DNA of 64,000 nucleotides from Lytechinus pictus (Eukaryota): positions 992,001 to 1,056,000 of the forward strand of contig NC_087250.1 of assembly GCF_037042905.1 (NCBI RefSeq), in the 5' to 3' direction. The position numbers and the translations under genes were made by a program. Position 1 is the stretch's first letter. Each line of letters opens with the position of its first letter. The notes beneath the pieces are model-generated. The model made no database searches. It had not been told where the DNA came from and was given only the letters and a program-made list of their open reading frames with translations. Positions 36,146 through 55,740 of the stretch are shown one piece after another.

Positions 36146-36611
36146 AAAAGCATTTTACAGGAATGAATTATTATATTGTATTTGTGCCTTTTTACATTGG
36201 TCAAATAAATATTACTACTACTACTACTATTACTACTACTACTACTACGACTACTACTACTACTACTANNNNNNNNNNNNNNNNNNNNNNNNNNNNNNNN
36301 NNNNNNNNNNNNNNNNNNNNNNNNNNNNNNNNNNNNNNNNNNNNNNNNNNNNNNNNNNNNNNNNNNNNNNNNNNNNNNNNNNNNNNNNNNNNNNNNNNNN
36401 NNNNNNNNNNNNNNNNNNNNNNNNNNNNNNNNNNNNNNNNNNNNNNNNNNNNNNNNNNNNNNNNNNNNNNNNNNNNNNNNNNNNNNNNNNNNNNNNNNNN
36501 NNNNNNNNNNNNNNNNNNNNNNNNNNNNNNNNNNNNNNNNNNNNNNNNNNNNNNNNNNNNNNNNNNNNNNNNNNNNNNNNNNNNNNNNNNNNNNNNNNNN
36601 NNNNNNNNNTA

Positions 36612-41282: not shown

Positions 41283-41963
41283 TAATAGGTAATAGGTAAT
41301 AGGAAATAGAACTTAGTTAGAAGGCCCGAGAGCCTACGACTTCGAGTCCCAATACTCGGCCGAAGAAATCGGTAAAATGCTCGCTACGAATAACATCAAT
41401 CCTCGTGAATTTGGAAGAATTGTTGTATTTCTCCACCTTAAGTGCAGCCACTCATTTTTTAAAGAGATTTCTGGCCTCTTCTGCGGATCAGGAATTTGGC
41501 AAAAGCTGCATTTTGTGCCCCTTTCTGACCACTCTGGCCCATGTATTTTATGCTAGCAATCAAAGGCGAGTGCCGAGGTCGGACACCGAGTTGTACGTCG
41601 CTGACGTCACAACCCCCCACGGAGATATAGGGAGTATGAGCAAAATGGCGATCTCCACGACCACGGGTAGGGTGTCTGGAGAAAAAAATTATTTTTCTTA
41701 TTTCAAGAAAATATAACATTTTCTTTGTTAATTTGAAGAGAAATGACCTTCAGACTGACAGAAATGTAACATTTTTGAAAAAAATCCAATTATTGGCTGC
41801 AAAAAAGAAGAATGAAATTAGGTAAATTTTCAGCATTTCTCTGCCATAGACTGTGTAGTTAAGAAATGGACACACACAAATCCAAATTTTTAGCTTCCGA
41901 GAGCTGTTATGAATTTATTATTAATGCCAAAAACTTGTCCATAAAGAGTCCAATAGGATTTTT

Positions 41964-42334
41964 TATGGGGAACTTGGTCGCCCGCGCGAAGTGCTACAAT
42001 ACGCGCGACCGTGCGTGCGACCATGCCCCCCAGAAACCCTCCATACGTACGCAGAATCAGGATCCCAAGATCAGACGCATTCTCACGTTCAGCTCTCGAT
42101 CAGTACAGTACTACAGTCTACTACGTATACGTCCCTCAAGTTCACACGAGTCATCAGGTTCTACGACAAGTCTACTTACAAGTTCTACGACAAGCTCTAT
42201 ATACTTACAAGTCATCGAAGTCTTCATCCTCTGTAAGATTAAGACGGACTGACCCAGGATTAAGGTGAGTATATGGTTCTCGGCAATCCAGCTTACTTTA
42301 TTTAGGTTAACATCCATATAGTTAGTTTACTATA
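41964..42334 (+). repeat. Gypsy 5' LTR (TAT...ATA termini; contains an AAG/GTGAGT donor at 42264/42265)
   Basis: Direct repeat of 53842-54212. Confidence 0.93.
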
Positions 42335-42337
42335 TAT

Positions 42338-42347
42338 TGGCGCTGCG
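42338..42347 (+). promoter_or_regulatory. Primer binding site, tentatively tRNA-Ser type
   Basis: TGGCGCTGCG 3 nt after the LTR; complementary to a tRNA ending ...CGCAGCGCCA. Only about 10 nt can be matched. Confidence 0.6.
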
Positions 42348-44921
42348 TATGAACACGACTCTGCGCTAGTTTTGTAAATGCAGTAAAACAAGCGGCGCAG
42401 AAAACCAAATTGGCTAGACATCGTTTTAAGTGCTTAAAAGTAGGGAAAAGTGTGCCGTAGGGCGGCAAAGTAAATCGCACTCTTTATAAATTGTTTAAAT
42501 TTTTGATTCAATCCGCCGTCCTACAGCGATATAGATCTGTATTATAGTTATCTTAAACAAATAATAGCAGTGTTTTAGGGCTTATTCTCAGCGTTTTTGC
42601 GTAGGTTTTAAACCCTTACACTATCCCCTTAACCCGGTTTAAATTTTGGGTGTGGCAGGACGCCACGTAGGGCACGCCATTTATGCAAATAGCGTTAAAC
42701 GTTTTCTATTGTTCGCCGCTCCCCGCATTCTATTGTGTGTTAGGGCTGAATGTATGCCTTGCCTGAGAGTTGCTTGGGGTGTGGTTCTGGCGATGATTTT
42801 GTATGTACCCCCTTTCCCTGTTAGGATTTAATTAAATTAGGATTTGAATTTTGATGTAGGATAATTAAATTTAGGAATTGTACGTAACTGAGATATATAT
42901 TTATTGTTGAATTTGGCTGTTGGTGATTTAATGATTGCGTGATTGGTGAAAGATCGTATTGCTTAACCTGACTTTCCCCCCTTTAGCTGTAGCAGACGAC
43001 GAGGAATCTACGTACGTTGAGTAGTTGAGTTATGATGATTCTGTATATGCCGTTCTTGATTCGTGAGGTCGTGTATTGATATTACGAGTGAAAACGAATT
43101 TTGACCATTTCTTATACAGATTTTCCCGTCTTGCAGTAATCATTTTTTGGCGCCAGTTAGGTTGCCGTTTTACGGATTTATTCGGCGCCGTTTAGATTGC
43201 CGTTTTGCATATAGGGAGGATTTTACTATTGCCGTTTTATAGGTGCGTGAAGTCTGAATTATACCGTGACTTTTTTGTATGGAATTATCCTAGTGTTATC
43301 TGGCTAAAACGGAGTTACCCTCATACGACTTTAGTACGTCGGGTTTCTCTTGTGGACTTTATTTAATGATCAATTTGATTTCATCTCGGTATTAAGATAT
43401 CATCTCAAAAAAAAAAAAAATAAATAAATAAAAATAAAAATAATAAAATAAGGAGTGATTGATATATTTTATATGCCGTTGCAAGCCACCAATGCTTATA
43501 TTTAGAGTGGCATTAAGCTACAAATTTTAGTGGATGGTATTTATATTAATTAATTATTTAGTCAGTTGGTGAATACTTAGAGTATTTTTTGGAGCTTGAA
43601 CATAAGTCTGGGGACTCGACCAATTATATTATATTGGCCTAACTTGTCTTCGGATTTAGTGAATATACTCATTGATTCCCGTCACGTACATTGGTGACGC
43701 TCGTATTTTGGACAATTATTGTGCTAATTTTATTTTAGGACTGAAAGTTAACTTTTGACTTTGTATTTTTATAATACGGTCCGTCTCATTATAATCCGAC
43801 GCTACTTGCGTTAGTGTAGTTCCAAAAACTCTCTCGTACTTAATCTATTCAGACTTCCGTACACCCGTGGGGAATTTATTTAGAGAAAAAAACTTAATAG
43901 TTTATTGGAGTTAAAGATTATATATTTTGACCGTTATAACAATCTCTGGCCACCGGTAGTTTGTTGCAAAGTCGCACCTGCTGTCAATTAAAAGTACAAC
44001 GATATTATTAATAGGGCCTTTGTGGATTGTTTAAGCTGATCTAGAGTTAGGATTTTGCTTGATCGTTTGTACGTTTACATTTAGGAGTTCTTTGGAACAG
44101 AAATTTGACTTACTTAGTGAATACTTGAACTTCTTGTCATTTTGAGAAAAGAAATACTTATATAAATTTTGCTCTGAATAAAAAAGAAAATAAAATTTTC
44201 ATTCGGTTCTGAGATAGAAAGTTTTGAATCTGTAATTCGAGTTTATATAGGAAAGAATTATTCCAAACAAATTTGACTTTGAGATATAATATTTTAGAAC
44301 TTCCATCTAATTATAAGAGCATAGGGTGCTTGTAATTTATTTCGGTATTCTTAGTTCATATTAGTATTGGGTCAAGGATTGGACCATTTTATATCAGTAT
44401 TTGGTCATTTTCTTTGGTCATCGACAAGCAAGGTCATTTTTAGTTTTTAATTATCTGAAGGGTGTTTTCAGTATACAAAGCTTATAGATAAGGGATAAGC
44501 AAAGTATATATATATACGCCCGAAGATAATTTAAACTTTTGTGTCAGCAGTGGAGGCATTTTCCACTTAGTACACATATAGGTGCTGGGTGCACCTGGTT
44601 AGCTCAGCATCGGAGTAGAGGCTAGTGTTTTATTTTCGGTATATTTACACATTTGTACTTAAATAATATAGGCCTCATATTGGCCATATCAGAGCTTTAA
44701 ACCTTTGATAAATTTTAATAATTAGGTTTTCCAAACAAACTTAGTTTTTAGTTGTTGTTGTTTAGCTCTCTGGTAAGATTGATGATTGAAAGTGATCAAT
44801 CCTATTTGGTGGTGATCACTGATCAGTGATAATTCTGATTTTCGAAGGAGCTTTACTCAGTACTTAGGTGCTTGTTAGCGTAAGATAGAACTTTCAAAAT
44901 TTAGTCACCCTTCATCGAATC

Positions 44922-47081
44922 ATGTCCAAGATTCAAATTAATTGTTGTGAGCCAGAGGAGCTATTGAAGGTCCCAGGAATTGGTAGTACTTTGGCCGAGC
45001 GAATATTGGTCCTCCGAGAGGCTAATGATATTACGATGGAAACTTTCTTAGATATTCCGCACATACGTAATGCCTCTGAGATTGCAGGGTATTTTGATTT
45101 TGCCCCTTATGCTGTTTTAGAATCTGGCACAAATTCTACCGATTCTATTGAGGAAAGAGTGATAGTAGGCCCTGCTGCGGCAGGTGATGTAGCAGCACAG
45201 GTGGGCGATGAGCAGCCAATCCAATCCCCCTCTCCCTACCCTTTTGAATCCTATCCTCAAGATTCGTTGCCAGGACATCTTAAAATAGTAATGGGGAGAG
45301 AGAGTGGAGAGTCAGGGGCTGCCAGCTCACGCAGAGATAAGGTAGCTAGAGGCAATTCGCCCTCACGGAAGCATGTGGTTTTCTCTTCGCCGCGAAAACG
45401 CACACCCCCACCGAGGGAAGGTGAGGATGATGGGCTTTCTTCCCCTATGAAGTCACCCTCAAGTGACCAGGCCAGTCCTAGGTCATCTAGGGATCATGCT
45501 AACCCACCAAGGGGTAGCCACGGGTCACCTATATCTCGGTCACCCACATCTGGTCGCCACAACAGCCGCCGTGGATCACCACGTACAAACCGCCGGGATA
45601 GTCGATATGATTCTCCTTTTCGGGATTATGGTGGGCGCCGACAAGGGTCACCTAGAGGTCACAGGCGGGATCGATATGATCATAGTAGGGATCGTTATGA
45701 TCGGAGTAGAGATCGTTATGATCGCAGTAGGGATCGATATGACTACTATAGGAACAGGTATCGCTATTCCCCTCGCCGATATCGAAATGACCGTTATGAT
45801 TCTCCCCCACGATATTATAGGGGTAATCACAGTCCGTGTAGAGGTCGTGATGATTGGCATAGGTCAAACTCTAACCGTTCCCACTCGCCTGACCATGGCC
45901 CTCGTAGGTCATCATCCCCCCGTAGAACACAAGACCACAATAGGCGGGATGCAAGACAGTCAAATGAAGACGTAGCAGTTGATTTATCCTCGCGTGTTTT
46001 GCAATCACTATTTGCCATCAACCGTGCCCCTGAAACGCAGGCCCCCCAATCCCAAGAGCATGATTTCGAGTCCCACAACCCACCACCGGTACGAAGATCC
46101 TTAAGTACCAGTACAGGGGAAGGGGACAGACCCCGACTGGTTTCGGTGCCAAAGTCCATAACCTTTAACGGTACGGGCAGCTGGCAAGCCTTCATTGCGA
46201 AGTTTAAATTATTCGCCAGTGAGAATGGGTGGGACGCCAAACAATCGCGTAATTACTTATGTTGGACGTTAAATGGGGAGGCTAGCTCCTATCTAGCCAC
46301 GCTTCTTGAGCGAGAGCCCGATATGCCATATAACATTATGGTGAATAGGATGGAAAAGAGGTTCACACTTAAAGAAATGCCTGAGGTATCGCAAATGAAT
46401 TTCTCTTATGCAAGACAGACCCCTGACGAGAATGTCACCAAGTGGGCTGCTCGGTTGCTTACCTTAGCCTCTCAGGCTTTTCCTAATTTGCCCGAGGCAT
46501 ATGTGCAGCAGCAGGTAGTGATGCGTTTCTGCCAGGGCTCCGCAGATAAGGAAGCTGGGCAACATGCACTCAATTCCAGACCTAAGACCGTGGAAGAGGC
46601 TGTTGATCTTGTTAAATGGTATCAACACTCACACCGAGCTATTTATGGGAAACCGCGCAGGGAGGTTAAACATGTCTCCTTGTCTGAAAAGACCCCCCTT
46701 GAACCAACCGCAAGGCAGGTGAGTGCGCCCCCTACTTCCCCAGCGTATACCGTTTTAGAGCGAAGGGTTTCCGCTTTAGAAGGGAAGATGGACTCTGCAC
46801 TAAAGCAATTGGAAGCACTTGGGTCTTTGCCGGCTACTGTTCAAAGCCTAGCTGAGAGTGTAAAAAAGTTAGTAGTTTCTCCTCGTGGTAGAGGCAGAGC
46901 ATCTCCTGCCCGAGGGAATATGTCACCGGGTCGTATTGGTGCCTGCTTCCACTGTGGAAAGTCTGGACACTTCAAGAACGAGTGTCCAGAACGAGGCCCC
47001 CGACCGAGCGTTTCCTTTGTCTGTGAAGATTTGGGAAACGATTCGGGATCGGAGGAGGAGGTCCGACCCCGATCCCACTAA
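44922..47081 (+). CDS. Gypsy Gag with N-terminal HhH (ComEA-like) motif, RS/RD-rich region, capsid domain and CCHC knuckle
   Basis: IQINCCEPEELLKVPGIGSTLAERI; (RDRYDRS)n; FNGTGSWQAFIAKF; CFHCGKSGHFKNEC. Confidence 0.92.
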   Translation: MSKIQINCCEPEELLKVPGIGSTLAERILVLREANDITMETFLDIPHIRNASEIAGYFDFAPYAVLESGTNSTDSIEERVIVGPAAAGDVAAQVGDEQPIQSPSPYPFESYPQDSLPGHLKIVMGRESGESGAASSRRDKVARGNSPSRKHVVFSSPRKRTPPPREGEDDGLSSPMKSPSSDQASPRSSRDHANPPRGSHGSPISRSPTSGRHNSRRGSPRTNRRDSRYDSPFRDYGGRRQGSPRGHRRDRYDHSRDRYDRSRDRYDRSRDRYDYYRNRYRYSPRRYRNDRYDSPPRYYRGNHSPCRGRDDWHRSNSNRSHSPDHGPRRSSSPRRTQDHNRRDARQSNEDVAVDLSSRVLQSLFAINRAPETQAPQSQEHDFESHNPPPVRRSLSTSTGEGDRPRLVSVPKSITFNGTGSWQAFIAKFKLFASENGWDAKQSRNYLCWTLNGEASSYLATLLEREPDMPYNIMVNRMEKRFTLKEMPEVSQMNFSYARQTPDENVTKWAARLLTLASQAFPNLPEAYVQQQVVMRFCQGSADKEAGQHALNSRPKTVEEAVDLVKWYQHSHRAIYGKPRREVKHVSLSEKTPLEPTARQVSAPPTSPAYTVLERRVSALEGKMDSALKQLEALGSLPATVQSLAESVKKLVVSPRGRGRASPARGNMSPGRIGACFHCGKSGHFKNECPERGPRPSVSFVCEDLGNDSGSEEEVRPRSH

Positions 47082-47090
47082 AAGCGGACC
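47033..47090 (+). promoter_or_regulatory. -1 ribosomal frameshift signal (G GGA AAC + predicted H-type pseudoknot)
   Basis: Slippery heptamer 47033-47039 in the gag frame; stem 1 gggatcgg (47045-52) / ccgatccc (47069-76); stem 2 ggtccg (47060-65) / cggacc (47085-90). The -1 frame is open into pol. Confidence 0.85.
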
Positions 47091-47101
47091 CCAATTCTAA
47101 T

Positions 47102-50100
47102 TTGGATTCCGAAAATGCCAAAGTACTTTTACAGGATTCGCTCCCTCAAGAGGAGCAAGAAACAGATATATCCTTGGTAGTACTTGAGGCTAACAGGTCG
47201 TTGGATAGCGAAGACTCTCTTCCCAGAGGAAGTAAGGAACTGGGTGTTCCCTCTCCTGAATTGATTGTTAAAGAATCCGAACTGAGAGATGGCGGTCAGG
47301 ACGGTATTGGTATCACTGAAGGGTCAGGGAAAGTTCCGAGTGTCAAGGAACTCTCCTCTCCACCCCCCATCAGCCAGGTGATTGATACGCCTAGGCCTCC
47401 ATTGGAGCCCAGCCCCTGGTTGGTACCCCCCTGGCCACCCCCTGAAGAGAATCCGCAATTAGATAGCTGGATCCTGAAGGACCTCGAACAGGCCTCGGAC
47501 GTTGTAGTCTGCCGGATAAAGTCATCATCTACTTATAGCATAACTATATTGGTCGGTAACCAATCGATGCGTGCCGTAATCGATACTGCTGCAGAGGTGA
47601 CTATAATGTCTGACAAAATCTACCATGCACTACGCCCCGCTCCTCCAGTTATTAGGTCAGTCGTCCTAAATACAGCTGGAAGAAATATGAGTATGACTGG
47701 AATGATTGTAGGACCGGTTGATATGACTCTAGGTGGCCAGACGTTTAGTGAATGCGTCTATGTTGCCCCGATAGACGATGATATGCTGCTTGGAGCTGAT
47801 CTCCTCAAGAAGCACAGTGCATTCATCAATATACCGGATTCCTTGTTAATCTTTCAGGGCGAGTGCATTGCAATGACTTGTGGTGAAGACACTGATACCT
47901 CTCAGGTTTTCGTTTCAAATTCTGTGACCATCCCCCCAATGTCAGTCAAACGAGTACAATGCGAACTTGATTCTTCTTGCACGTTTGACCAATTTATGGT
48001 AGAGCCGGATGTTGCCCTTATAGGATTGGTTCCCCGCACATTGCATTCTGGGAGTAGCTCTATACAGTTATATGCTGTGAATGCTACTGATGTTTCCATC
48101 CATTGGGATAAAGGTCAACACCTCGGACAGGCTTCTCGCGTAGGTTCTAGAGAACCCCCCGACTTTGACAATCCTATTCCAAGTGTCAGCCAGGTTGACT
48201 TGACTGGGGATGCCAAAATCCCCACCCATTTGGAAGATCTTTGGAAACGATCTTCGGAACACTTAATTCCTGAACAGCAAGGAATATTAAAGGGCTTGTT
48301 GCTAGAATTTGAGGGTGTCTTTGCCCGGGATGAATTCGACTTGGGTAATTTCACAGCCATTACCCATTCAATCGACACAGGCGAAGCTACGCCCATCAAG
48401 CAAAAGATGAGGCGTACCCCCATGAACTTTGTTCAAGAGGAGCGAGCATGTCTTAACAAAATGCTGTCCGCCGGGGTGATCCAACCTTCGATGTCGGAAT
48501 GGGCGTCCGCCCCTGTCTTAATCCGAAAACGGGACGGTAGCGTCCGTTGGTGTATAGACTATCGTAAACTTAACAACGTTACGAAGAAAGATGTCTACCC
48601 GCTTCCTTGCATCGAAGAGTGTTTGGATACCCTAGCAGAGAATTCATGGTTCTCCAAACTAGATGCAAATTCTGCCTATTGGCAAGTCAATCTCAGGCCG
48701 GAAGACCGTGAAAAGACAGCATTTATCACCAAGTATGGTTTATACGAGTTTGTTCGCATGGGCTTCGGCTTATGTAATGCCCCAGCCACGTTCTCTCGAG
48801 CAATGAATCTCATCCTCAGGGGATTGAACTGGGATATCGCTTTAGCCTTCTTGGATGATGTTGTAGTGCTCGGCACCTCTTTCTCTGATCACGTCACTAA
48901 CATCAGACAGGTGTTGGAACGATTTAGGGACTTTAAGCTTAAGTTGAAGCCAAAGAAATGTTCCTTCTTCCAACGTCGGGTAGAGTTTCTTGGTAGAGAG
49001 GTTGATGGGAATGGTCTCCACCTTAAGGAAGAGCATGTTCAAGCCGTAGTGGACTGGCCCACCCCTAAGTCCACAAAGGAGGTGGAACGGCTCCTCGGAC
49101 TTGTAAATTATCACCGTGTCTTCCTTAAAGACTATGCCCAGGTTGTAGGGCCACTCTATGGCCTCACTGGGAACAATGACTTCCGCTGGGAGGACCAGCA
49201 TCAAGTGGCTTTTGAGGAAGTCAAGAGGCTCATGACCACCGCCCCTATCCTCGCACTACCCAACTCCACGGATCCGTTCATTCTGGATACCGATGCGTCT
49301 GGCACAGCTATTGGGGCTGTTTTAACCCAAGTCCAACAGGGGCAAGAGCGAACTATTGCATATGGCAGTTTTTCCCTGACCCCTGAACAACGACGCTATT
49401 GTGTAACCAGGCGTGAGCTGTTGGCAGTGGTACGGTTTACCCGCCAGTATAGGCATTACCTCCTCGGAAAGCCTTTTACAGTTCGCACGGACCATGGGAG
49501 TCTGACATGGTTAATGAACTTTAGGGAGCCTCAAGGGCAGCTTGCCCGGTGGCTCGAAGAACTGGGCCAATATGACATGGCAGTTGAACACCGCCCTGGC
49601 AAGAAACATCAGAATGCAGATGCATTGTCTCGTATACCCGACGGCGACTTTACATGTGAGAACTACCGTCTGGGTATTGACCCCAAGAGTTTGCCCTGTG
49701 GTGGTTGTGCATACTGCCTGAAGGCCCACACAAACTGGGCACACTTCACTGATGCTGTGGACAATGTGATCCAATTGGCACAAAGGAGTAAAGTTTCGGA
49801 AGTTACCCTTGACCCCGGAGAATCGGAGGACCTCTTTATCACTCACCTGGATATTGGTCCAATCGACGGTCCATTCTCTTTTAGGGTCAACGGGGTAACC
49901 CATGATGCCGGGTCTGGTATCGACCTCACCTCAATGGACTTTCTTCGGAAAGAACAAGAGGCTGATGGTCAACTGACCCCCTTGCGCAAATGGCTGCTCG
50001 ATAAAGAGGAACCAGACGAGGGAACTGTTCTTCTGTGGGACCCCGCTGGAAAGTTCCTATGGGTCAACCGAGAGCTGTTTGTGCTTAAGGATGGTGTCAT

Positions 50101-51385
50101 TTGGCGTAAAGGCGATGACAATCTCCTACTTGTAGTGCCCAAGTCTTTGCGTACTGAAGTGATCAAGCTAAATCATGATCCTCCTTCAGCAGCTCATGCT
50201 GGTGTGAACCGTACTAAAGGTAAACTTCGGTCCAAATACTACTGGTATGGTATGTCGGGCGACATCCAAGAGTATATTCGGAGATGTGCCGTCTGTAATA
50301 AAAATAAGAAAGCCGTGAGGTATGGGAAACACCCCATGATAACTTATCATGCGGGGGCCCCGATGGAACGTGTACACCTCGATTTCATGGGTCCTTTACC
50401 CAAAACCTCACGAGGTAACGTGTACATCTTGATGATGGTGGACCAGTTCACCAAGTGGGTTGAGTGTGTCCCACTGCCCTCTCAGACAGCGGAAGTAACC
50501 GCTCAGGCAGCCATTAGCGAGTTCTTTTGCCGCTTTGGCTATCCATTCCAGATTTTTACTGATCAGGGCAGAAATTTTGAGAGCAGGTTATTCACGAACA
50601 TCTGTAAACTGCTCCATATACATAAGGCTAGGACTACCCCGTACCGACCTTCCGCAAACGGCCAGGTTGAACGTTTCAACCGAACCTTAATGGATGCGGT
50701 AAGGTGCTACATTGGGAAGTCCCAGACTCATTGGGACCACAACCTCGCCCAGATCGCTGGAGCGATTCGTTCCACGATCAACCGTAGTACGGGATTCACG
50801 CCCAATCAATTGATGCTGGGGCGTGAAACTAATCAACCAGCGGAGCTGATTTTTCCACTTCCCCCATCCGTCTCTGACCGACCTCTGGATGAATATTCAT
50901 CTCAGTTATCCCAGAGCATCCGAGAGGCGCACGATGCTGCGAGAGCCACCCTCCGGAATACACAGCGACGGTTGAAGCGGGATTACGACATAAAGGTATA
51001 CTTGCGGCAATTTAAAGAAGGGGACCGAGTATACCTTCTCGCCAAGGCGACCCCCAAGGGAAAATGCAAGAAGCTGCAATCTCCCTGGAAGGGTCCGGCT
51101 ATTATCGTGAAGCGATATACCCCTTATGTATACCGGGTGATCTATCGGAACAAGGCCCTGACTGTAAACCATGACCAGCTCAAAAGGTGCCTTGACGAGG
51201 CCAAGCCCTCAGGCCCTGACTGGAGGAAGGAAAGGTATTGCTACTGTAGAACCCCCGACGATGGATCGTTCATGATTCAATGTGATGGGTGCGATGAGTG
51301 GTTCCATGGTGCATGTGTTGGTGTTACCCATGCGGAAGGAATGTCTATTGACAAGTATTTTTGTCCTTTTTGTAGCTGTGGGTAA
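47102..51385 (+). CDS. Gypsy Pol (protease, RT, RNase H, integrase, C-terminal PHD finger); probably entered by frameshift at ~47039
   Basis: IDTAAEVT protease; RWCIDYRKLN, YPLP and FLDD RT; DTDAS RNase H; H...H...CAVC, TDQGRNF and NGQVER integrase; WKGP; C4HC3 YCYC...MIQCDGCDEWFHGAC...CPFC. Confidence 0.96.
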   Translation: MDSENAKVLLQDSLPQEEQETDISLVVLEANRSLDSEDSLPRGSKELGVPSPELIVKESELRDGGQDGIGITEGSGKVPSVKELSSPPPISQVIDTPRPPLEPSPWLVPPWPPPEENPQLDSWILKDLEQASDVVVCRIKSSSTYSITILVGNQSMRAVIDTAAEVTIMSDKIYHALRPAPPVIRSVVLNTAGRNMSMTGMIVGPVDMTLGGQTFSECVYVAPIDDDMLLGADLLKKHSAFINIPDSLLIFQGECIAMTCGEDTDTSQVFVSNSVTIPPMSVKRVQCELDSSCTFDQFMVEPDVALIGLVPRTLHSGSSSIQLYAVNATDVSIHWDKGQHLGQASRVGSREPPDFDNPIPSVSQVDLTGDAKIPTHLEDLWKRSSEHLIPEQQGILKGLLLEFEGVFARDEFDLGNFTAITHSIDTGEATPIKQKMRRTPMNFVQEERACLNKMLSAGVIQPSMSEWASAPVLIRKRDGSVRWCIDYRKLNNVTKKDVYPLPCIEECLDTLAENSWFSKLDANSAYWQVNLRPEDREKTAFITKYGLYEFVRMGFGLCNAPATFSRAMNLILRGLNWDIALAFLDDVVVLGTSFSDHVTNIRQVLERFRDFKLKLKPKKCSFFQRRVEFLGREVDGNGLHLKEEHVQAVVDWPTPKSTKEVERLLGLVNYHRVFLKDYAQVVGPLYGLTGNNDFRWEDQHQVAFEEVKRLMTTAPILALPNSTDPFILDTDASGTAIGAVLTQVQQGQERTIAYGSFSLTPEQRRYCVTRRELLAVVRFTRQYRHYLLGKPFTVRTDHGSLTWLMNFREPQGQLARWLEELGQYDMAVEHRPGKKHQNADALSRIPDGDFTCENYRLGIDPKSLPCGGCAYCLKAHTNWAHFTDAVDNVIQLAQRSKVSEVTLDPGESEDLFITHLDIGPIDGPFSFRVNGVTHDAGSGIDLTSMDFLRKEQEADGQLTPLRKWLLDKEEPDEGTVLLWDPAGKFLWVNRELFVLKDGVIWRKGDDNLLLVVPKSLRTEVIKLNHDPPSAAHAGVNRTKGKLRSKYYWYGMSGDIQEYIRRCAVCNKNKKAVRYGKHPMITYHAGAPMERVHLDFMGPLPKTSRGNVYILMMVDQFTKWVECVPLPSQTAEVTAQAAISEFFCRFGYPFQIFTDQGRNFESRLFTNICKLLHIHKARTTPYRPSANGQVERFNRTLMDAVRCYIGKSQTHWDHNLAQIAGAIRSTINRSTGFTPNQLMLGRETNQPAELIFPLPPSVSDRPLDEYSSQLSQSIREAHDAARATLRNTQRRLKRDYDIKVYLRQFKEGDRVYLLAKATPKGKCKKLQSPWKGPAIIVKRYTPYVYRVIYRNKALTVNHDQLKRCLDEAKPSGPDWRKERYCYCRTPDDGSFMIQCDGCDEWFHGACVGVTHAEGMSIDKYFCPFCSCG

Positions 51386-51408
51386 CCCATTTCCTTTTCT
51401 CTTTTCAG

Positions 51409-52722
51409 ATGGATGAGCTAGAACTCCACGCCGAGTCAACCTTCGAGGTGGAAATGGACACCCGGCCCCCCTCTACCCCCCCAGAGGCTATCCCTCCAGA
51501 GGCTGCCTGGCAGGCAGAAATAGATGCACGGATGGGCCCAATCCCGCCCCCTGGCAGTAGACAAAAACGTACGTGGCTCCGTAAGTTGCGTCGATTACGG
51601 AGTCGGTTAAGGGCAGGGTCCAGGGATTCCCCTAATTCCCTAAAGGAAACTCCCGGTCCTGCCCCTGTCATGATGAAGGGCGTTAAGCCATCCAAAGGAA
51701 TGGGGAGGGGGAGAGGGTTTGCAAGGGTCCGCAAGGGTCCCATAACACCCGGGACGCCCGGTACTTTCCATAGTAAGGGGAGAGGGAGGGGTCTCTTGAA
51801 TTACCTCAACCGAGAAGATTTCTCTTTAATGGATGCCCCCGCTCGGTTAATGGATGCCCCCGCCCCTGCTCCGAGCTCCCATCCCCCGCCTCTGCTAGGG
51901 TTTGATAGCCATTTTCACCCAGACAGGTGTGGTTGGTACAGTAAGAGAAAGGGGAAGAGCGTGGTGACAAAGCACCCGGTAGAGATAGTCGGAGGGGTCC
52001 TGAACTTCTGTGACCCAGAGTTCTTTATGGACCCCGGCTTTCTTTCCCGGGTGCTGGCTCACAGCCCCCCATACAACAAGAGGGACGGGAGCTGGAGATT
52101 AGCAGTAGGGATACACCCTAAACAGGCCTCACAGTACACCGAAGATCAGTGGCAGCGTTTGGTTGCCCTACTTCAAAGCCCCTTGGTTGTAGGCGTAAGC
52201 GAACTGGGCTTTGACTTTTCTGTCAACTCCCAGTGGTGGCCTGACCAGGAAGCGCTCTTTCTGCGACTTCTTGGTCAGGGCACCCAAGGGAGGGTCCTTA
52301 TCCTTCACCTAAGGGGTGATTCGAAGAATAATACCGCGTACGCGGCGCACACTTTGGCCCGCCGGCTTCTTGCAAAGCACTGCTCCCCACTCCAAAGGAT
52401 ACACATCCATAACTTCTCCAGCGATGCTTTGCAAGCCGGGAAATGGATCGCTGCCTTTCCATATTGCTATTTCGGTATTGCCGGGATGGCAGCGTACTTC
52501 ACAACAGAACAAATTCAAGGCCTTAGGGCCGTCCCCGCGGATCGGCTAATTCTGGAGACCGATGCTCCGCATCTCCCTCCTCGCCCGGACATGACGGTGA
52601 CTTCACCTGAAAGCCTGGGTGATGTGGGGGCGGTGGTAGCCAACCTGCGGGGGCAGCCCTTGGCCACTATAATGGCCCAAGCCACATACAATGCAAAACT
52701 ACTGTATGGCCTGTTAGGGTAA
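51409..52722 (+). CDS. TatD-family metal-dependent DNase with a basic/RG-rich N-terminal extension (Gypsy ORF3)
   Basis: DSHFH, AVGIHP, GVSELGFD, LILHLRG, IHIHNFS and RLILETDAPHL reproduce the TatD motifs (DxHxH, GxHP, GExGLD, HxR, HCF, ETDxP) in order. Confidence 0.9.
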   Translation: MDELELHAESTFEVEMDTRPPSTPPEAIPPEAAWQAEIDARMGPIPPPGSRQKRTWLRKLRRLRSRLRAGSRDSPNSLKETPGPAPVMMKGVKPSKGMGRGRGFARVRKGPITPGTPGTFHSKGRGRGLLNYLNREDFSLMDAPARLMDAPAPAPSSHPPPLLGFDSHFHPDRCGWYSKRKGKSVVTKHPVEIVGGVLNFCDPEFFMDPGFLSRVLAHSPPYNKRDGSWRLAVGIHPKQASQYTEDQWQRLVALLQSPLVVGVSELGFDFSVNSQWWPDQEALFLRLLGQGTQGRVLILHLRGDSKNNTAYAAHTLARRLLAKHCSPLQRIHIHNFSSDALQAGKWIAAFPYCYFGIAGMAAYFTTEQIQGLRAVPADRLILETDAPHLPPRPDMTVTSPESLGDVGAVVANLRGQPLATIMAQATYNAKLLYGLLG

Positions 52723-53833
52723 TAGGGTTATGTTATTCATTTTTTTGGTGGCCCCTGTCTCATGTTTTATTTTTCTGTCCAAAATCTTGCCCTTCCTACT
52801 TTGGAGGTTAATTAAAAGATAAAGTCGCGGCCTATCCATGTAATTGAGGGGTCTTAGGTTCTTCTCTTCTGCGATGCAGTATTTTCTCTCTCCGGAGAAC
52901 GTTTCTATTCTGTATCGTGGCGGAGAAGGACTGAGAAGTTTTCCCAACGTACCGGGCCGAACTAGACCAGATTTTACATTCCCAAGTGGAAAGTGTCTGT
53001 TGGCTGTCATCTTTCGGACCCTCCTTAGTCTTCAGGGACTGGTAAAGGTTGCGGACTCTTATATTCCATAAAGCCTAAGGGACATTGGTTTAGTTTTTTG
53101 AAATATTGTGCCAAATTGTGTCGCACGTAAAGTTATATATCCAGGTGATATTATATTTATTCCAACCGTGGTGCCAAAATACGTCACAAGTGAGTTTATA
53201 AATTTCTTTACATACTATCCAGCGGATATAGGTTTGGTTTTCAAAGACAATATTGTGCCAAGTTGTGTCACACAAAGTTTTTTAGTTATTTCAACCATTG
53301 TGCCGAATGACGTCACAGGTAAAATTATACATTTCCTTTAATGATATCCAGGCGATATGGTCTTCAATTTAGTTTTAAAGTCTGCTGGCCAAGCAAGGCT
53401 TATTACTTGGTTATCATCCTCCAAAGTTTGGGGATTGAGATTTGGGGCCATCCATATTTTTTTGTGTGTAAATAGTCCTTTTCACGCATGAACTACATGA
53501 ACTACATGAACTACATGCTTAGTAGCTCGTAACCTAAAGACATGTATACATATATATGTATATGTTCAATAAAGTTTTTTGAGGGTCTGTTTAATGCCCA
53601 CGAGTATAGGGAAAGAAACCTAAATTTCCTTAGTATATGTTTTCGTGATATTTCCGAGATACTGGGAAGTAAATAGTTCCTTTCAGGGGTCTAGGACGAG
53701 TGTTTTTATTCCTGGTACTACATGTACCGGTTTATTGTTACTTTTTTGTCCACTCCTCAGACCTATCTTTATATCTACATGAGTGATTAGGAAAGTACAG
53801 TTAATAATCAATCTCCCCTTTATTTTTACGGTT

Positions 53834-53841
53834 GGGGGGAA
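53834..53841 (+). promoter_or_regulatory. Polypurine tract of the Gypsy element
   Basis: GGGGGGAA directly before the 3' LTR. Confidence 0.8.
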
Positions 53842-54212
53842 TATGGGGAACTTGGTCGCCCGCGCGAAGTGCTACAATACGCGCGACCGTGCGTGCGACC
53901 ATGCCCCCCAGAAACCCTCCATACGTACGCAGAATCAGGATCCCAAGATCAGACGCATTCTCACGTTCAGCTCTCGATCAGTACAGTACTACAGTCTACT
54001 ACGTATACGTCCCTCAAGTTCACACGAGTCATCAGGTTCTACGACAAGTCTACTTACAAGTTCTACGACAAGCTCTATATACTTACAAGTCATCGAAGTC
54101 TTCATCCTCTGTAAGATTAAGACGGACTGACCCAGGATTAAGGTGAGTATATGGTTCTCGGCAATCCAGCTTACTTTATTTAGGTTAACATCCATATAGT
54201 TAGTTTACTATA
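53842..54212 (+). repeat. Gypsy 3' LTR
   Basis: Direct repeat of 41964-42334. Confidence 0.93.
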
Positions 54213-54856
54213 TTTTTATGCTCTATCTGATGGTATGATTTTTATAAAGATTTGGAAACCAGATCACAATGAAAAATTGCGACAAAGTGAAAAAAATTGT
54301 GCAAAACAGAAATTTCATTTTCCCATAGAAAACGCATGGAGAAATGGCAATCTCAACACACACAAAAATAAGGGTTTGCAATTTATCTCTAAATCCTTAT
54401 TTAAAATGATCATATAAACTTGTCCTTACTGTCAAAAGAAAGCCCTGAATTTTCTCTTTCCATACATGCCAAACACAAGTTAATAATCAATTCAGATCAC
54501 ATTTTTCTAGTAGCCTGAACTTCCCCGAAAAAATGTGCCATATTTTCCCCTAAATTAGCCTGTTTTATGCTGACTCTTTTCAGTGTGGCTTCAGACACCC
54601 TACCACGGGTCTTTCTTTTCAAATATCAAAATATTGATAACTTTGACTTGGCATATCATGGGAAATAGGAAACCGTTCTGCCTCATTTTAATTTTATTTT
54701 AATCAGTGAAATGTAATCACTTTATGATCAGATAATAAATCTATCCTTTCATTTTCCTTTAAGTTGCATGCTTGTGTGAGTGTGTCATGCTGTGTGCACA
54801 TCATGAAATCGCACTAACAAAACATCTAATATATGGGGCCGAAGCGTAAAACTTGC

Positions 54857-55018: not shown

Positions 55019-55740
55019 TTTGCGTGAGACTTTCAACCGCTCTACTGCCCACCAATGATCGCTTTACACGGTACCGGTACGCTCGATCGATGCGAGAATA
55101 GAATTAGAATCGAGCGAGCGAGCTCAAATGATGGGGCGCCGCAGGCATGGCGGGGGCTAGAAATAAAGAGTTGATATGATTATCATTTTCCTTAGAATTA
55201 TGCATGGCATGAGTCGAAATGAGTATTTTTCGCTATAAAGCTATTTTTCTTACTTGTTTTTTTCTATCAAACATGCTGTTCTATCTTATCTTAGCATCCA
55301 TTTGTTTTCTTTAGCTTATTATTAGTTTAATTCCTTAATAATTTTATTTTTTTATATTTTTCTTTTCTTTCTTTCATTTTTTCTTTTATTTTCTTTGTTT
55401 TCTTTTCTCTTCGATCTCTCTGCATCTCNNNNNNNNNNNNNNNNNNNNNNNNNNNNNNNNNNNNNNNNNNNNNNNNNNNNNNNNNNNNNNNNNNNNNNNN
55501 NNNNNNNNNNNNNNNNNNNNNNNNNNNNNNNNNNNNNNNNNNNNNNNNNNNNNNNNNNNNNNTTTTTCTTTTACATTTTCTTTTCTTTGCATTTATTTGT
55601 TTTCTTTCCTATTCTTTTAATTAATTTTATTTCTTTATCTTTTTCCTAATTCCCTTCACTTTCATTCCATATAATGGAAATTATATAAAGTTAAGTTAGA
55701 ATATAAAAACGCCTATATAGAAAGAAAAGAAAGCCGTAAA

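What the first reader, a model, noticed from the sequence alone, without database searches (positions are those of the whole stretch)
41964..54212. Intact Gypsy lineage with three accessory DNA/chromatin modules: HhH-Gag, PHD-integrase, TatD
Seen: a single element with LTRs identical by eye and all ORFs open combines a ComEA-like HhH motif, a PHD finger, a stand-alone TatD nuclease, atypical LTR ends and a 2.6-kb leader. I do not know a described family with this combination, but could not search. Inference: a probably active retrotransposon with its own DNA-binding, chromatin-reading and DNA-processing toolkit.
Basis: partly seen in the sequence, partly recalled or inferred. Interest (0 to 1): 0.85.

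Follow-up and report, generated by a model that had tools for sequence, protein, structure and literature searches.

The report
Sea-urchin Gypsy retrotransposon carrying TatD nuclease
This is an intact, very young LTR retrotransposon of the sea urchin Lytechinus pictus from a widespread marine-invertebrate lineage; it carries a DNA-binding Gag head, a histone-reading finger on its integrase and its own TatD nuclease gene, which genome annotations mistake for a host gene.

Summary
There are two 372-nt LTRs with no mismatch, a 4-bp target duplication, a 2586-nt leader and three open reading frames. Gag has an N-terminal ComEA/EEPD1-like (HhH)2 domain. Pol (PR-RT-RNH-IN) is reached by a -1 frameshift at G GGA AAC and ends in a CFP1/PHF2/BPTF-type PHD finger. 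A separate ORF3 encodes a TatD-fold nuclease with all metal-binding motifs.

It is not a one-off. L. pictus holds at least two more full-length copies on other chromosomes (98-99% identical, all ORFs open). Their ORF3 differences are 6 synonymous and 0 nonsynonymous.

The same three-module layout recurs at 57-69% integrase identity in a pearl oyster and on metagenome contigs. The crown-of-thorns starfish copy (a contig that starts inside pol) keeps IN-PHD-TatD. Nearly every TatD relative with enough upstream sequence sits just downstream of a PHD-integrase.

The "TATDN2" and "YcfH-like" genes annotated in echinoderms and molluscs nest inside this transposon TatD clade.

PHD-retrotransposon fusions and enzymatic ORF3s (bdelloid DEDDy exonuclease) are known. 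I found no paper describing TatD or HhH-Gag in an LTR element. Repbase and Dfam could not be checked.

Verdict: real, probably active, a new variant of a known kind. What TatD does, and whether ORF3 is expressed by splicing, are inferred only.

The parts
41960..41963 (+). 5' target-site duplication (TTTT)
   Evidence: The same 4 nt follow the 3' LTR. Copy L005 has ATGC, Pinctada ATAC and Ostrea ATAT.
41964..42334 (+). 5' LTR, 371 nt, with termini TA...TA
   Evidence: 100% identical to the 3' LTR. Ends read directly from the sequence.
42198..42203 (+). TATA-like box in the LTR (inferred promoter element)
   Evidence: Motif scan. Inference only.
42262..42270 (+). Consensus 5' splice-donor-like site AAG|GTGAGT in the 3' part of the LTR
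   Evidence: A GTRAGT site lies at the equivalent LTR position in the Pinctada (L052) and Ostrea (L051) elements. Its function is inferred.
42338..42349 (+). PBS-like site (TGGCGCTGCGTA), 3 nt after the LTR; primer tRNA not identified
   Evidence: It does not match the 3' end of the window's tRNA-Lys.
42335..44921 (+). Leader, about 2.6 kb, AT-rich (GC 0.35), non-coding
   Evidence: No ORF over 61 aa, no Rfam hit, no match elsewhere in the window. It diverges 1-2% between copies against 0.3-0.45% for the ORFs.
44922..47081 (+). gag (719 aa)
   Evidence: ORF list and Pfam.
44928..45056 (+). N-terminal ComEA/EEPD1-like (HhH)2 domain of Gag
   Evidence: HHH_3 at 32.1 bits. A family profile matches EEPD1 at E 9e-15 and ComEA at 1e-10 in the PDB. 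It is conserved in relatives.
45132..46121 (+). Arg/Ser/Pro/Asp-rich low-complexity linker of Gag, including a 21-nt tandem repeat (45667-45742) that encodes DRYD repeats
46242..46481 (+). Capsid-like (PNMA/retrotransposon Gag) region
   Evidence: Pfam PNMA, weak here. Above or near the cut-off in relatives.
46941..46991 (+). CCHC zinc knuckle (nucleocapsid)
   Evidence: Pfam zf-CCHC, 24.1 bits against a cut-off of 20.8.
47033..47039 (+). -1 frameshift slippery heptamer G GGA AAC, in the gag frame
   Evidence: Relatives have U UUA AAC at the same place.
47045..47076 (+). 8-bp stem (47045-47052 pairs with 47069-47076), 5 nt after the slippery site
   Evidence: The z-score is only -1.05, so this is suggestive only.
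47027..51385 (+). pol reading frame (-1 relative to gag)
47543..47812 (+). Aspartic protease
   Evidence: Pfam gag-asp_proteas.
48521..48997 (+). Reverse transcriptase
   Evidence: Pfam RVT_1, E 9e-31.
49187..49573 (+). RNase H
   Evidence: Pfam RT_RNaseH and RT_RNaseH_2.
50135..50650 (+). Integrase (H2C2 zinc domain plus DDE core)
   Evidence: Pfam Integrase_H2C2 and rve.
51239..51373 (+). PHD finger at the extreme C-terminus of integrase, CFP1/PHF2/BPTF type
   Evidence: Pfam PHD, E 1e-9. The best PDB matches are all H3K4me3 readers.
51389..51408 (+). Polypyrimidine tract plus CAG, a 3' splice-acceptor-like site ending exactly at the ORF3 ATG
   Evidence: Similar tracts lie 0-8 nt before the ORF3 ATG in L014, L025, L034 and L052. 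Its function is inferred.
51409..52722 (+). ORF3 (437 aa): Pro/Arg/Gly-rich N-terminal 160 aa followed by a TatD domain
   Evidence: No hydrophobic segment of transmembrane strength.
51901..52710 (+). TatD-fold metal-dependent nuclease domain
   Evidence: Pfam E 4e-29. All metal-ligand motifs are conserved. AlphaFold2 model pLDDT 90. Best structural matches are TatD, YcfH and TATDN3.
52723..53833 (+). 3' untranslated region
53834..53841 (+). Polypurine tract GGGGGGAA
53842..54212 (+). 3' LTR
54213..54216 (+). 3' target-site duplication (TTTT)

Best explanation
The region is one complete, recently inserted and probably still mobile Ty3/Gypsy-type LTR retrotransposon of the sea urchin Lytechinus pictus. 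It belongs to an old lineage of marine-invertebrate elements found in echinoids, a starfish, a pearl oyster and many unassigned metagenome contigs. Their conserved layout is HhH-Gag / PR-RT-RNaseH-IN-PHD / ORF3-TatD.

Shown here:
- the anatomy;
- at least three near-identical full-length copies, at least two with different target duplications;
- purifying selection on RT-IN and TatD;
- recurrence of all three modules, and co-divergence of TatD with integrase.

Inferred mechanism:
1. Transcription starts in the 5' LTR downstream of a TATA-like box.
2. The full-length RNA is both genome and Gag/Gag-Pol mRNA. Pol is made by -1 ribosomal frameshifting at G GGA AAC.
3. ORF3 is translated from a subgenomic mRNA. 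It is spliced from a GTGAGT donor in the LTR to a pyrimidine-tract/CAG acceptor that ends at the ORF3 ATG, as env is in retroviruses and CERV is in Cer1.
4. The (HhH)2 head of Gag binds nucleic acid backbone without sequence specificity, in place of a membrane-targeting matrix domain.
5. The C-terminal PHD finger tethers the intasome to H3K4-methylated nucleosomes. It occupies the position the chromodomain has in chromoviruses.
6. The TatD protein acts in trans as a metal-dependent 3'-5' exonuclease-type enzyme on single-stranded or RNA:DNA replication intermediates. That makes it an accessory end-processing or clean-up nuclease alongside RNase H and integrase.

My probabilities: what it is, about 0.9. 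TatD is needed by the element, about 0.65. Spliced expression, about 0.55. The specific nuclease step, 0.3 or less.
For: Anatomy.

Host and copies:
- P0001 (L. pictus, annotated as TATDN2) is identical to ORF3 apart from a 7-aa indel.
- L005 and L006 are full-length copies on chromosomes CM073227.1 and CM073226.1, 99.2% and 98.0% identical.
- All ORFs are open and both LTR pairs are 100% identical.
- The target duplications differ: TTTT here and ATGC in L005.

Selection: variable codons, synonymous to nonsynonymous, are ORF3 6:0, the RT-IN core 6:0 and gag 6:4. The nonsynonymous changes in pol cluster in the linker before the protease. The leader diverges 3-5 times faster than the ORFs.

Recurrence:
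- A 55-kb ENA contig has the order HHH_3-gag, pol-PHD, TatD, as does JGI contig L004.
- Of the 44 loci from the metagenome TatD scan, 17 have at least 1.3 kb of sequence upstream of the TatD match and are not L004 found again. Fifteen of these carry IN and/or PHD there in the same orientation; L039 and L045 do not.
- Pinctada imbricata L052 has 100% identical LTRs plus gag, pol-PHD and TatD.
- Acanthaster L001 (the contig starts inside pol) has PR-RT-RNH-IN-PHD-TatD.
- An HhH profile hits the gag 5' end in 15 loci, L052 among them.

Domains:
- The TatD metal motifs are conserved in 12 divergent sequences. The model has pLDDT 90 and its best structural matches are TatD, YcfH and TATDN3.
- The best PDB relatives of the PHD finger are CFP1, PHF2, BPTF, DIDO1, PHF8, Spp1 and TAF3.
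- The HhH profile is closest to EEPD1 and then ComEA.

Evolution of TatD: transposon-linked TatDs are spread through a single clade with 100% SH-aLRT support against bacterial TatDs. The genes annotated as host genes nest inside that clade. Integrase and TatD identities correlate (Mantel r 0.54, p 0.0025).

Frameshift: slippery heptamers lie in the gag/pol overlap in six elements.

Splice signals.

Precedents: spliced ORF3 mRNAs in Cer1 (PMC10309623) and ORF3 exonucleases in bdelloid LTR elements (PMC5408684).
Against: - There is no transcript, protein or transposition data.
- The splice sites are motif matches. Only 2 of 10 elements pass a strict acceptor filter, and L004 and L010 show no acceptor next to the ATG.
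- The frameshift stem is no more stable than shuffled sequence (z -1.05).
- The primer tRNA was not identified.
- The S:N counts rest on few substitutions, some shared between copies.
- The L006 copy has no target duplication.
- The Ostrea relative lacks both TatD and HhH, so neither module is indispensable to the wider PHD lineage.
- H3K4me3 binding is inferred from sequence similarity alone; the finger has two of the four BPTF cage aromatics, as CFP1 does.
- TatD substrates vary widely within the family, so the step it serves is a guess.
Confidence: 0.78

Rival explanations
1. ORF3 is a passenger. On this reading a host TATDN2-like gene was transduced or trapped between LTRs, contributes nothing to the element and decays neutrally.
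For: NCBI annotates identical or related ORFs as host genes named 'TATDN2' or 'YcfH-like'. One 16.8-kb contig holds two TatD ORFs and no gene with a pol domain. One locus has no pol within 10 kb upstream (L045). The Ostrea relative does without TatD.
Against: The three copies show 6 synonymous and 0 nonsynonymous differences. Metal ligands are kept at 31-55% pairwise identity across elements. TatD lies directly downstream of PHD-IN in 15 of 17 testable metagenome loci and in two named species. TatD co-diverges with integrase. The annotated 'host' genes nest inside the transposon clade, not the reverse.
Confidence: 0.05
2. TatD is a counter-defence factor, not a replication enzyme. It would degrade stray cytosolic cDNA or RNA:DNA hybrids, or host small-RNA precursors. 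The element would then escape nucleic-acid sensing or silencing, much as host TREX1 clears retroelement cDNA.
For: The fold is that of a 3'-5' exonuclease-type TatD enzyme with an intact site. The protein is separate and trans-acting, with a basic RG-rich N-terminus and no membrane segment. It evolves faster than integrase (31-55% against 55-69% identity), as conflict-facing genes often do. From general knowledge, secreted TatD DNases of parasites degrade extracellular traps. QatD is a TatD-family defence nuclease.
Against: No direct evidence. The faster rate could simply reflect weaker constraint. The long variable N-terminal regions (160 to about 800 aa) fit either role.
Confidence: 0.2
3. 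ORF3 is translated from the full-length RNA by termination-reinitiation after pol, or by an internal entry site, not from a spliced subgenomic mRNA.
For: The pol stop and the ORF3 ATG are only 23-34 nt apart in the window element, L014, L025 and L052. Strict acceptor motifs are missing in most relatives.
Against: The gap is 254-435 nt in L004, L010 and L029. A pyrimidine tract plus CAG ends 0-8 nt before the ATG in five divergent elements. A GTRAGT donor lies in the last third of the 5' LTR in all three elements for which the LTR is available. ORF3s of LTR elements are typically expressed from spliced messages (PMC5408684; PMC10309623).
Confidence: 0.25
4. The element looks intact but is no longer mobile. 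The three copies would then come from segmental duplication or gene conversion.
For: L006 lacks a target duplication and abuts a related, diverged element. Only three copies were examined.
Against: The copies lie on different chromosomes with unrelated flanks. Two have clean, different 4-bp duplications. Every copy has a 100% identical LTR pair and open ORFs. Substitutions are biased towards synonymous sites.
Confidence: 0.1

Closest known systems
Chromoviruses (Ty3/Gypsy elements with a chromodomain after the integrase GPY/F region, e.g. MAGGY, Tf1)
   Same: The pol order is the same. A small histone-mark reader is fused to the very C-terminus of integrase, directly after the GPY/F-like region. 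The presumed role, tethering integration to marked nucleosomes, is the same.
   Different: The expected target is therefore active promoters, not heterochromatin. No chromodomain is present.
PHD-retrotransposon fusions catalogued in surveys of chromatin readers (Grau-Bove et al., bioRxiv 10.1101/2021.11.30.470311; CR1 PHD, Kapitonov & Jurka 2003, and Chlamydomonas REM1, Perez-Alegre 2005, as cited in PMC6673714)
   Same: PHD domains co-occur with RT and integrase domains in many eukaryotes.
   Different: As far as I could read, those reports do not describe this marine-invertebrate lineage, its HhH-Gag or its TatD ORF3.
Bdelloid rotifer LTR retrotransposons (Juno, Vesta) with enzymatic ORF3s: DEDDy 3'-5' exonuclease or GDSL esterase (PMC5408684)
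   Same: A third ORF in the env position encodes an enzyme, not an envelope protein. In both cases it is a 3'-5' exonuclease-type enzyme, presumably expressed from a spliced message.
   Different: The fold is unrelated (TatD TIM-barrel amidohydrolase against DnaQ-like DEDDy). The host phyla differ. The bdelloid ORF3s showed no clear departure from neutrality, whereas here synonymous-only change and deep conservation are seen.
Cer1 of C. elegans and its CERV protein (PMC10309623)
   Same: [quoted passage not shown] That ORF is expressed from a spliced mRNA and encodes a non-envelope nuclear accessory protein.
   Different: CERV is a nematode-specific RNA-export factor with no enzyme fold. Cer1 has no gag-pol stop, whereas this element uses a -1 frameshift.
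Cellular TatD family (E. coli TatD/YcfH/YjjV, human TATDN1/TATDN3; TATDN2 by annotation)
   Same: The Pfam family, the HxH / E / H / H / D metal-ligand motifs and the predicted TIM-barrel fold are shared.
   Different: ORF3 scores below every NCBIfam equivalog cut-off. It forms its own invertebrate clade apart from bacterial TatDs. It is multi-copy and sits inside LTR elements. Its relation to vertebrate TATDN2 could not be tested.
ComEA / EEPD1 (HhH)2 DNA-binding modules
   Same: The 60-aa two-hairpin pattern is the same. A profile of six Gag N-termini matches EEPD1 at E 9e-15 and ComEA at 1e-10.
   Different: Here the module is fused to the N-terminus of a retrotransposon Gag, where retroviral matrix would be. 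I found no report of this.

Membership tests
Ty3/Gypsy (Metaviridae) LTR retrotransposon | Two direct LTRs flanked by a short target-site duplication | tested here: met
   LTRs identical at 372 of 372 positions. 4-bp TTTT duplication.
Ty3/Gypsy (Metaviridae) LTR retrotransposon | pol domain order PR-RT-RNaseH-IN (integrase last) | tested here: met
   Pfam hits in that order along the 1427-aa pol.
Ty3/Gypsy (Metaviridae) LTR retrotransposon | Gag with a capsid-like region and a CCHC nucleocapsid knuckle | tested here: met
   zf-CCHC is above its cut-off. The PNMA-like capsid match is weak here and stronger in relatives.
Ty3/Gypsy (Metaviridae) LTR retrotransposon | PBS next to the 5' LTR and a polypurine tract before the 3' LTR | tested here: inconclusive
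   The PPT GGGGGGAA is present. A TGG-initiated site lies 3 nt after the LTR, but no matching tRNA was identified.
Ty3/Gypsy (Metaviridae) LTR retrotransposon | Canonical LTR termini 5'-TG...CA-3' | tested here: not met
   The termini are TA...TA here and TG...TA in the Pinctada and Ostrea relatives. This is a common, not universal, feature, so it does not exclude membership.
Named Gypsy clade (Mag, Mdg1, Mdg3, CsRn1, Gmr1, Cer1, errantivirus, chromovirus) | Placement on an RT or pol tree with reference elements | not testable with these tools
Chromovirus | Chromodomain at the integrase C-terminus | tested here: not met
   Only a PHD finger is found there.
Errantivirus / env-carrying Gypsy | ORF3 encodes a membrane fusion glycoprotein (signal peptide, transmembrane anchor) | tested here: not met
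   ORF3 is a TatD enzyme. Its maximum 19-residue Kyte-Doolittle hydropathy is 1.36, with no Pfam env hit. Env-carrying elements are reported absent from Echinodermata (PMC13524379).
TatD nuclease family (PF01026) | Pfam score above the gathering threshold | tested here: met
   102 bits against a cut-off of 27.
TatD nuclease family (PF01026) | Metal-ligand motifs (N-terminal HxH, Glu, two His, Asp) | tested here: met
   DSHFH, SELGFD, LHLRG, IHIHNF and LETDAP are present, and are invariant or nearly so in 12 relatives.
TatD nuclease family (PF01026) | TIM-barrel amidohydrolase fold | tested here: met
   AlphaFold2 pLDDT 90.2 and pTM 0.89. The top 17 Foldseek matches are all TatD-family structures, with TM-scores of 0.56-0.81 normalised by target length and 0.68-0.74 by query length.
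TatD nuclease family (PF01026) | Metal-dependent nuclease activity | not testable with these tools
   Needs a biochemical assay.
Host TATDN2 orthologue (as annotated by NCBI) | Single-copy cellular gene outside mobile elements, orthologous to vertebrate TATDN2 | tested here: not met
   The identical ORF lies inside three LTR elements. The annotated invertebrate 'TATDN2' and 'YcfH-like' proteins nest within the transposon-linked clade. No vertebrate protein was found among the 30 of the top 150 HMMER hits whose sources were looked up. Orthology to vertebrate TATDN2 itself was not tested.
H3K4me3-reading PHD fingers (CFP1/PHF2/BPTF class) | C4HC3 zinc ligands | tested here: met
   All eight ligands can be read in the last 50 residues of pol. 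Pfam PHD E 1e-9.
H3K4me3-reading PHD fingers (CFP1/PHF2/BPTF class) | Aromatic cage and actual methyl-lysine binding | tested here: inconclusive
   In the BPTF alignment, the Tyr before the first Cys and the Trp before the His align with residues I recall as cage residues. A Met replaces the third, as in CFP1 and PHF2. Binding itself was not tested.
ComEA-like (HhH)2 domain (PF12836) | Pfam score above threshold and conservation in relatives | tested here: met
   32.1 bits for the isolated N-terminus. All 6 aligned relatives match, best E 6e-10. The profile matches EEPD1 and ComEA structures.

The most novel reading that the evidence does not exclude
The TatD ORF3 of this retrotransposon lineage and animal TATDN2 (the R-loop/RNA:DNA-hybrid nuclease of vertebrates) may share a direct origin. 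Either TATDN2 is a domesticated ORF3 of such an element, or the element captured an ancestral TATDN2 before echinoderms and molluscs diverged. In either case the transposon enzyme would act on the RNA:DNA hybrids of reverse transcription. That would tie a vertebrate genome-stability gene to a retroelement accessory nuclease. It would also mean that 3'-5' exonucleases have been recruited at least twice (TatD here, DEDDy in bdelloids) for the same unknown step of LTR-element replication.
Probability: 0.12. Interest if true: 0.85.

Novelty: new variant of a known kind. Interest (0 to 1): 0.6.

Why it matters
- It adds a conserved, selected nuclease gene of the TatD family, and a ComEA/EEPD1-like DNA-binding head on Gag, to the accessory functions known in LTR retrotransposons. 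It shows that the two travel with a PHD-integrase across echinoderms and molluscs.
- It gives a testable system for two open questions. One is why unrelated LTR elements recruit 3'-5' exonuclease-type enzymes into the env slot. The other is whether an H3K4me3-type reader steers integration to promoters, the mirror image of chromodomain targeting to heterochromatin. The L. pictus copies are young and intact, and this species is becoming a genetic model.
- It has a practical consequence. Proteins annotated as 'TATDN2', 'YcfH-like hydrolase', 'TatD family hydrolase' or 'DDE-type integrase' in invertebrate genomes are transposon genes. The same holds for those in symbiont MAGs (Sedimenticola, Candidatus Thiodiazotropha). 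Both the annotations and the MAG bins need correcting.

Tried and rejected
- A tblastn of pol against the phage collection was uninformative and a wasted call.
- The word-indexed search with ORF3 alone found only 4 proteins. The exhaustive HMMER search and the alignment-based search were needed.
- I looked for a vertebrate TATDN2 among the best HMMER hits with all three cluster look-ups and found none. The origin question stays open.
- P0125, the L. variegatus 'TATDN2' model, has no gene record in the contig index, so its exon structure could not be examined.
- Leader: no repeats of note, no Rfam family, no similarity to the rest of the window, and no nested element. I rejected the idea that the long leader is a nested insertion. 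Its start is about 67% similar to the leader of a related element in L006, so it belongs to the element.
- PBS: it does not match the tRNA-Lys gene in the window. I did not pursue other tRNAs.
- Frameshift pseudoknot: only a simple stem is predicted and it is not better than shuffles.
- A strict splice-acceptor filter recovered the ORF3 site in only 2 of 10 elements, so the evidence for splicing stays moderate.
- NCBIfam places the TatD domain in no bacterial equivalog.
- Paper searches pairing TatD/TATDN2 with LTR retrotransposon, retrotransposon, Gypsy and transposable element found nothing relevant. A search for helix-hairpin-helix with Gag found only the unrelated Cer1 paper.

Full report

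Yes, in every detail.
- The two LTRs (41964-42335 and 53842-54213) are identical at all 372 positions.
- The LTR begins TAT and ends ATA, not TG...CA.
- A polypurine tract GGGGGGAA abuts the 3' LTR. A TGG-initiated PBS-like site starts 3 nt after the 5' LTR.
- The leader, 42336-44921, is 2586 nt. It has no ORF above 61 aa, GC 0.35, no Rfam hit and no similarity to the rest of the window.
- There are three ORFs: gag 44922-47081, pol (open 47027-51385, -1 frame) and ORF3 51409-52722.
- Pfam finds HHH_3, a PNMA-like capsid region and zf-CCHC in Gag. In Pol it finds protease, RT, RNase H, Integrase_H2C2, rve and a terminal PHD finger. In ORF3 it finds TatD_DNase at E 4e-29.
- HHH_3 is just under its cut-off in the whole protein. 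It reaches 32.1 bits when the first 70 residues are scanned alone.

**2. Host and copies**

ORF3 is identical, apart from a 7-residue indel, to an NCBI protein of Lytechinus pictus named 'putative deoxyribonuclease TATDN2'. That protein is encoded at two other places in assembly GCA_037042905.1, on chromosomes CM073227.1 and CM073226.1.

Both places hold full-length copies of the same 12.25-kb element, 99.2% and 98.0% identical to the window copy.
- In all three copies every ORF is open and the indels are in frame. Each copy's own LTR pair is 100% identical.
- The flanks are unrelated. L005 has a different clean duplication, ATGC.
- L006 has no duplication and is followed by a roughly 67%-identical relative, so it has probably recombined.

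This is the signature of a family that transposed very recently.

**3. Selection**

Across the three copies the variable codons split as follows, synonymous to nonsynonymous.

| Region | S:N |
|---|---|
| ORF3 | 6:0 |
| gag | 6:4 |
| pol, whole | 9:13 |
| pol, RT-to-integrase core (48400-51000) | 6:0 |

- Eleven of the 13 nonsynonymous changes in pol lie between 47105 and 47870. That stretch covers the linker before the protease, the protease itself and a little beyond.
- The leader has 1.0-2.0% substitutions plus many indels, against 0.3-0.45% in the ORFs.
- The numbers are small and some changes are shared. Even so, six of six synonymous changes in ORF3 is unlikely under neutrality, where roughly a quarter to a third of random changes are synonymous.

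**4. The architecture is a lineage trait, not a chance combination**

- A search with the integrase-PHD part found more than 1000 relatives, and nearly all of the 120 listed carry PF00628. Named hosts are Lytechinus, Acanthaster, Ostrea, Pinctada, Haliotis, Nucella, Gigantopelta and Ptychodera.
- A 55-kb ENA contig (74% integrase identity) has HHH_3-Gag, Pol-PHD and TatD in order. So does a JGI contig at 58% (L004).
- A scan of metagenome contigs with a TatD alignment gave 44 loci. Seventeen of them have at least 1.3 kb of sequence upstream of the TatD match and are not L004 found again. Fifteen of these carry IN and/or PHD upstream in the same orientation. The exceptions are L039 and L045.
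- Pinctada imbricata (L052) has a complete element: 238-nt identical LTRs, duplication ATAC, gag, pol-PHD and a 743-aa TatD ORF.
- Acanthaster (L001) has a degraded copy on a contig that starts inside pol, showing PR-RT-RNH-IN-PHD-TatD.
- A profile of six Gag N-termini finds the HhH module at the gag 5' end in 15 loci, including Pinctada and a Ptychodera locus.
- An Ostrea edulis relative (L051) has PHD but neither TatD nor HhH. So the PHD lineage is broader than the three-module group.

**5. The three modules**

*TatD*
- Twelve sequences sharing 37-50% identity with ORF3 keep the N-terminal HxH, the Glu and Asp of the SExGxD motif, two His motifs and the ETDxP Asp.
- The AlphaFold2 model is confident, with pLDDT 90.2 and pTM 0.89.
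- All 17 best structural matches are TatD-family proteins: S. aureus TatD, TATDN3, E. coli TatD, YcfH, YjjV and TATDN1.
- It reaches no NCBIfam equivalog cut-off.
- The N-terminal 160 residues are Pro/Arg/Gly-rich with basic clusters and GRG motifs. There is no membrane-strength hydrophobic segment. It is therefore not an envelope protein.

*PHD*
- All eight zinc ligands are present.
- The best PDB relatives (E 5e-15 to 1e-10) are CFP1, PHF2, BPTF, DIDO1, PHF8, Spp1 and TAF3. To my knowledge all of these read H3K4me3.
- The Tyr and Trp that align with BPTF cage residues are kept, and a Met takes the place it has in CFP1 and PHF2.
- The finger follows the GPY/F-like stretch of integrase, exactly where chromoviruses carry their chromodomain.

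*HhH*
- The first 60 residues follow the ComEA two-hairpin pattern.
- The family profile matches the animal protein EEPD1 best (E 9e-15), then ComEA (1e-10), topoisomerase V, Pol X and RuvA.
- This points to a non-sequence-specific nucleic-acid-binding module, perhaps of animal origin.

**6. Evolution of the TatD gene**

- In a tree rooted on bacterial TatDs, all invertebrate sequences form one clade (SH-aLRT 100).
- Transposon-linked TatDs are scattered through it from base to tips.
- Proteins annotated as host genes nest inside it. They include L. variegatus 'TATDN2', S. purpuratus LOC105441457, Diadema, Patiria, Argopecten, Mytilus and Ptychodera entries. The nearest neighbours of ORF3 are the S. 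purpuratus and L. variegatus proteins.
- Pairwise identities of integrase (55-69%) and TatD (31-55%) correlate (Mantel r 0.54, p 0.0025). This fits one old acquisition followed by co-divergence.
- I looked up the sources of 30 of the top 150 HMMER hits and none was a vertebrate protein. The relation to vertebrate TATDN2 is untested.

**7. How it is probably expressed (inferred)**

*Gag-Pol*
- The gag and pol frames overlap by 55 nt.
- Within the overlap, in the gag frame, lies G GGA AAC (47033-47039). An 8-bp stem follows 5 nt later, though it is not more stable than shuffles.
- Five relatives have U UUA AAC in the same overlap. Frameshifting by -1 is therefore well supported for the lineage. 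One relative has a fused gag-pol.

*ORF3*
- A 20-nt pyrimidine tract ending in CAG stops exactly at the ATG.
- Looser versions lie 0-8 nt upstream of the ATG in L014, L025, L034 and Pinctada, but not in L004 or L010.
- A consensus donor AAG|GTGAGT sits at 42262-42270, about 65 nt after a TATA-like box in the LTR.
- GTAAGT donors occupy the same part of the LTR in the Pinctada and Ostrea elements.
- I therefore favour a spliced subgenomic message, as for retroviral env, Cer1 CERV (PMC10309623) and ORF3s of other LTR elements (PMC5408684).
- The rival is reinitiation after the pol stop, only 23 nt upstream.

**8. What the modules probably do (inferred)**

- The PHD finger most likely tethers the integration complex to H3K4-methylated nucleosomes.
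- The HhH head most likely gives Gag an affinity for nucleic-acid backbone instead of membranes.
- From general knowledge, TatD enzymes are metal-dependent 3'-5' exonucleases of single-stranded DNA and RNA. AP-endonuclease activity has been reported for TATDN1 and TatD, and RNA:DNA-hybrid RNA degradation for TATDN2.
- I commit to an accessory end-processing or clean-up role on reverse-transcription intermediates, at 0.3 or less. A counter-defence role, clearing immunostimulatory cDNA, is the main rival at about 0.2.
- Bdelloid LTR elements independently carry a DEDDy 3'-5' exonuclease in the same slot. This suggests a common unmet need.
- The non-canonical 3' LTR end ...TA is shared by the Lytechinus, Pinctada and Ostrea elements. 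It may or may not be related.

**9. What is known already**

- PHD domains in retrotransposons, including fusions with RT and integrase, are documented.
- Enzymatic non-env ORF3s are documented.
- Env-carrying Gypsy elements are reported absent from echinoderms (PMC13524379).
- Four full-text searches pairing TatD/TATDN2 with retrotransposon terms returned nothing relevant. The only nearby item is a giant-squid Hox-cluster figure that lists 'TATDN2' beside a gene with a transposable-element name (POGK) and other non-Hox genes.
- A search for HhH with Gag returned only an unrelated use of the term.
- Repbase, Dfam and GyDB could not be queried. Consensus entries for such elements may exist without the modules having been described.

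**10. Verdict**

The element is a real, intact and probably active member of an old but apparently undescribed three-module Gypsy lineage. I rate it a new variant of a known kind and of moderate to high interest for transposon biology. It also has an immediate consequence for genome annotation and for cleaning MAG bins.

Copies were only compared. The assembly gaps in the window (36269-36609 and 55429-55562) lie outside the element and were left untouched.

Noticed in passing
window 12911-18052 (-) and 18273-20012 (+): A BEL/Pao LTR-retrotransposon polyprotein ORF of 1713 aa is fully open, with DUF1759, protease, RT, Peptidase_A17, integrase and DUF5641. It lies head-to-head with an inverted partial gag-protease copy of the same kind.
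   Followed up: partly
window 11107-11182 (-): A tRNA-Lys(CTT) gene (ARAGORN and Rfam). Its 3' end does not match the PBS-like site of the Gypsy element. The Ostrea relative L051 does have a tRNA-Lys-type PBS.
   Followed up: partly
P0083 (JGI metagenome contig, 6471 nt): A relative in the same PHD-integrase lineage (59% identity) has a full Tpt1/KptA RNA 2'-phosphotransferase domain (148 bits) inserted between integrase and the PHD finger. The lineage has therefore recruited more than one nucleic-acid-end enzyme.
   Followed up: partly
P0019, P0039, P0045, P0117, P0144, P0154, P0173, P0287: Proteins of this retrotransposon lineage are deposited as parts of bacterial MAGs (Sedimenticola sp., Candidatus Thiodiazotropha spp.). 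They are named 'TatD family hydrolase', 'RNase H-like domain-containing protein' or 'DDE-type integrase'. This is almost certainly host-animal DNA binned with symbiont genomes.
   Followed up: no
P0001, P0125, P0126, P0177, P0211, P0289, P0292, P0293, P0302; PMC6962438: Transposon ORF3s are annotated as host genes ('TATDN2', 'YcfH-like', 'TatD-like') in sea urchins, starfish, an acorn worm, scallop and mussel. A 'TATDN2' listed among the non-Hox genes of the giant-squid Hox cluster, beside POGK (a gene with a transposable-element name), may be the same thing.
   Followed up: partly
L006:12794-18300: The third L. pictus copy has identical LTRs but no target duplication. Its 3' LTR runs straight into sequence that resembles the leader and gag-pol junction of a roughly 67-86% identical relative. 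This suggests recombination between two elements, or a tandem arrangement.
   Followed up: partly
window 51838-51858 (ORF3): The window copy carries an in-frame 21-nt duplication (7 extra residues, a repeat of the MDAPA motif) that the two other copies lack.
   Followed up: yes
window 45667-45742 (gag): A 21-nt tandem repeat (3.6 copies) encodes DRYD repeats inside a 330-residue Arg/Ser/Pro/Asp-rich linker between the HhH head and the capsid region. Relatives have much shorter linkers.
   Followed up: partly
window 7330-9685 (-): Long ORFs are open in all three frames of one strand, and the strand composition is extreme (GC skew 0.78, AT skew 0.31 at 8001-10000). This looks like a purine-rich repeat, not a gene.
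   Followed up: no
window 41099-41196 and 41531-41628: An exact 98-nt direct repeat spaced 432 nt apart, 340 nt upstream of the element. Its nature is unknown.
   Followed up: no
ENA contig of sample ERZ26222911 (16.8 kb; no DNA available): The contig holds two TatD ORFs of 822 and 833 aa, 3.4 kb apart. None of its called genes has a pol domain. These could be a domesticated or non-autonomous form of ORF3.
   Followed up: no
L051:14237-15112 (Ostrea edulis): The oyster relative lacks TatD and HhH. It has a 291-aa ORF with no Pfam match in the ORF3 position, and keeps the GTAAGT donor in its LTR.
   Followed up: partly
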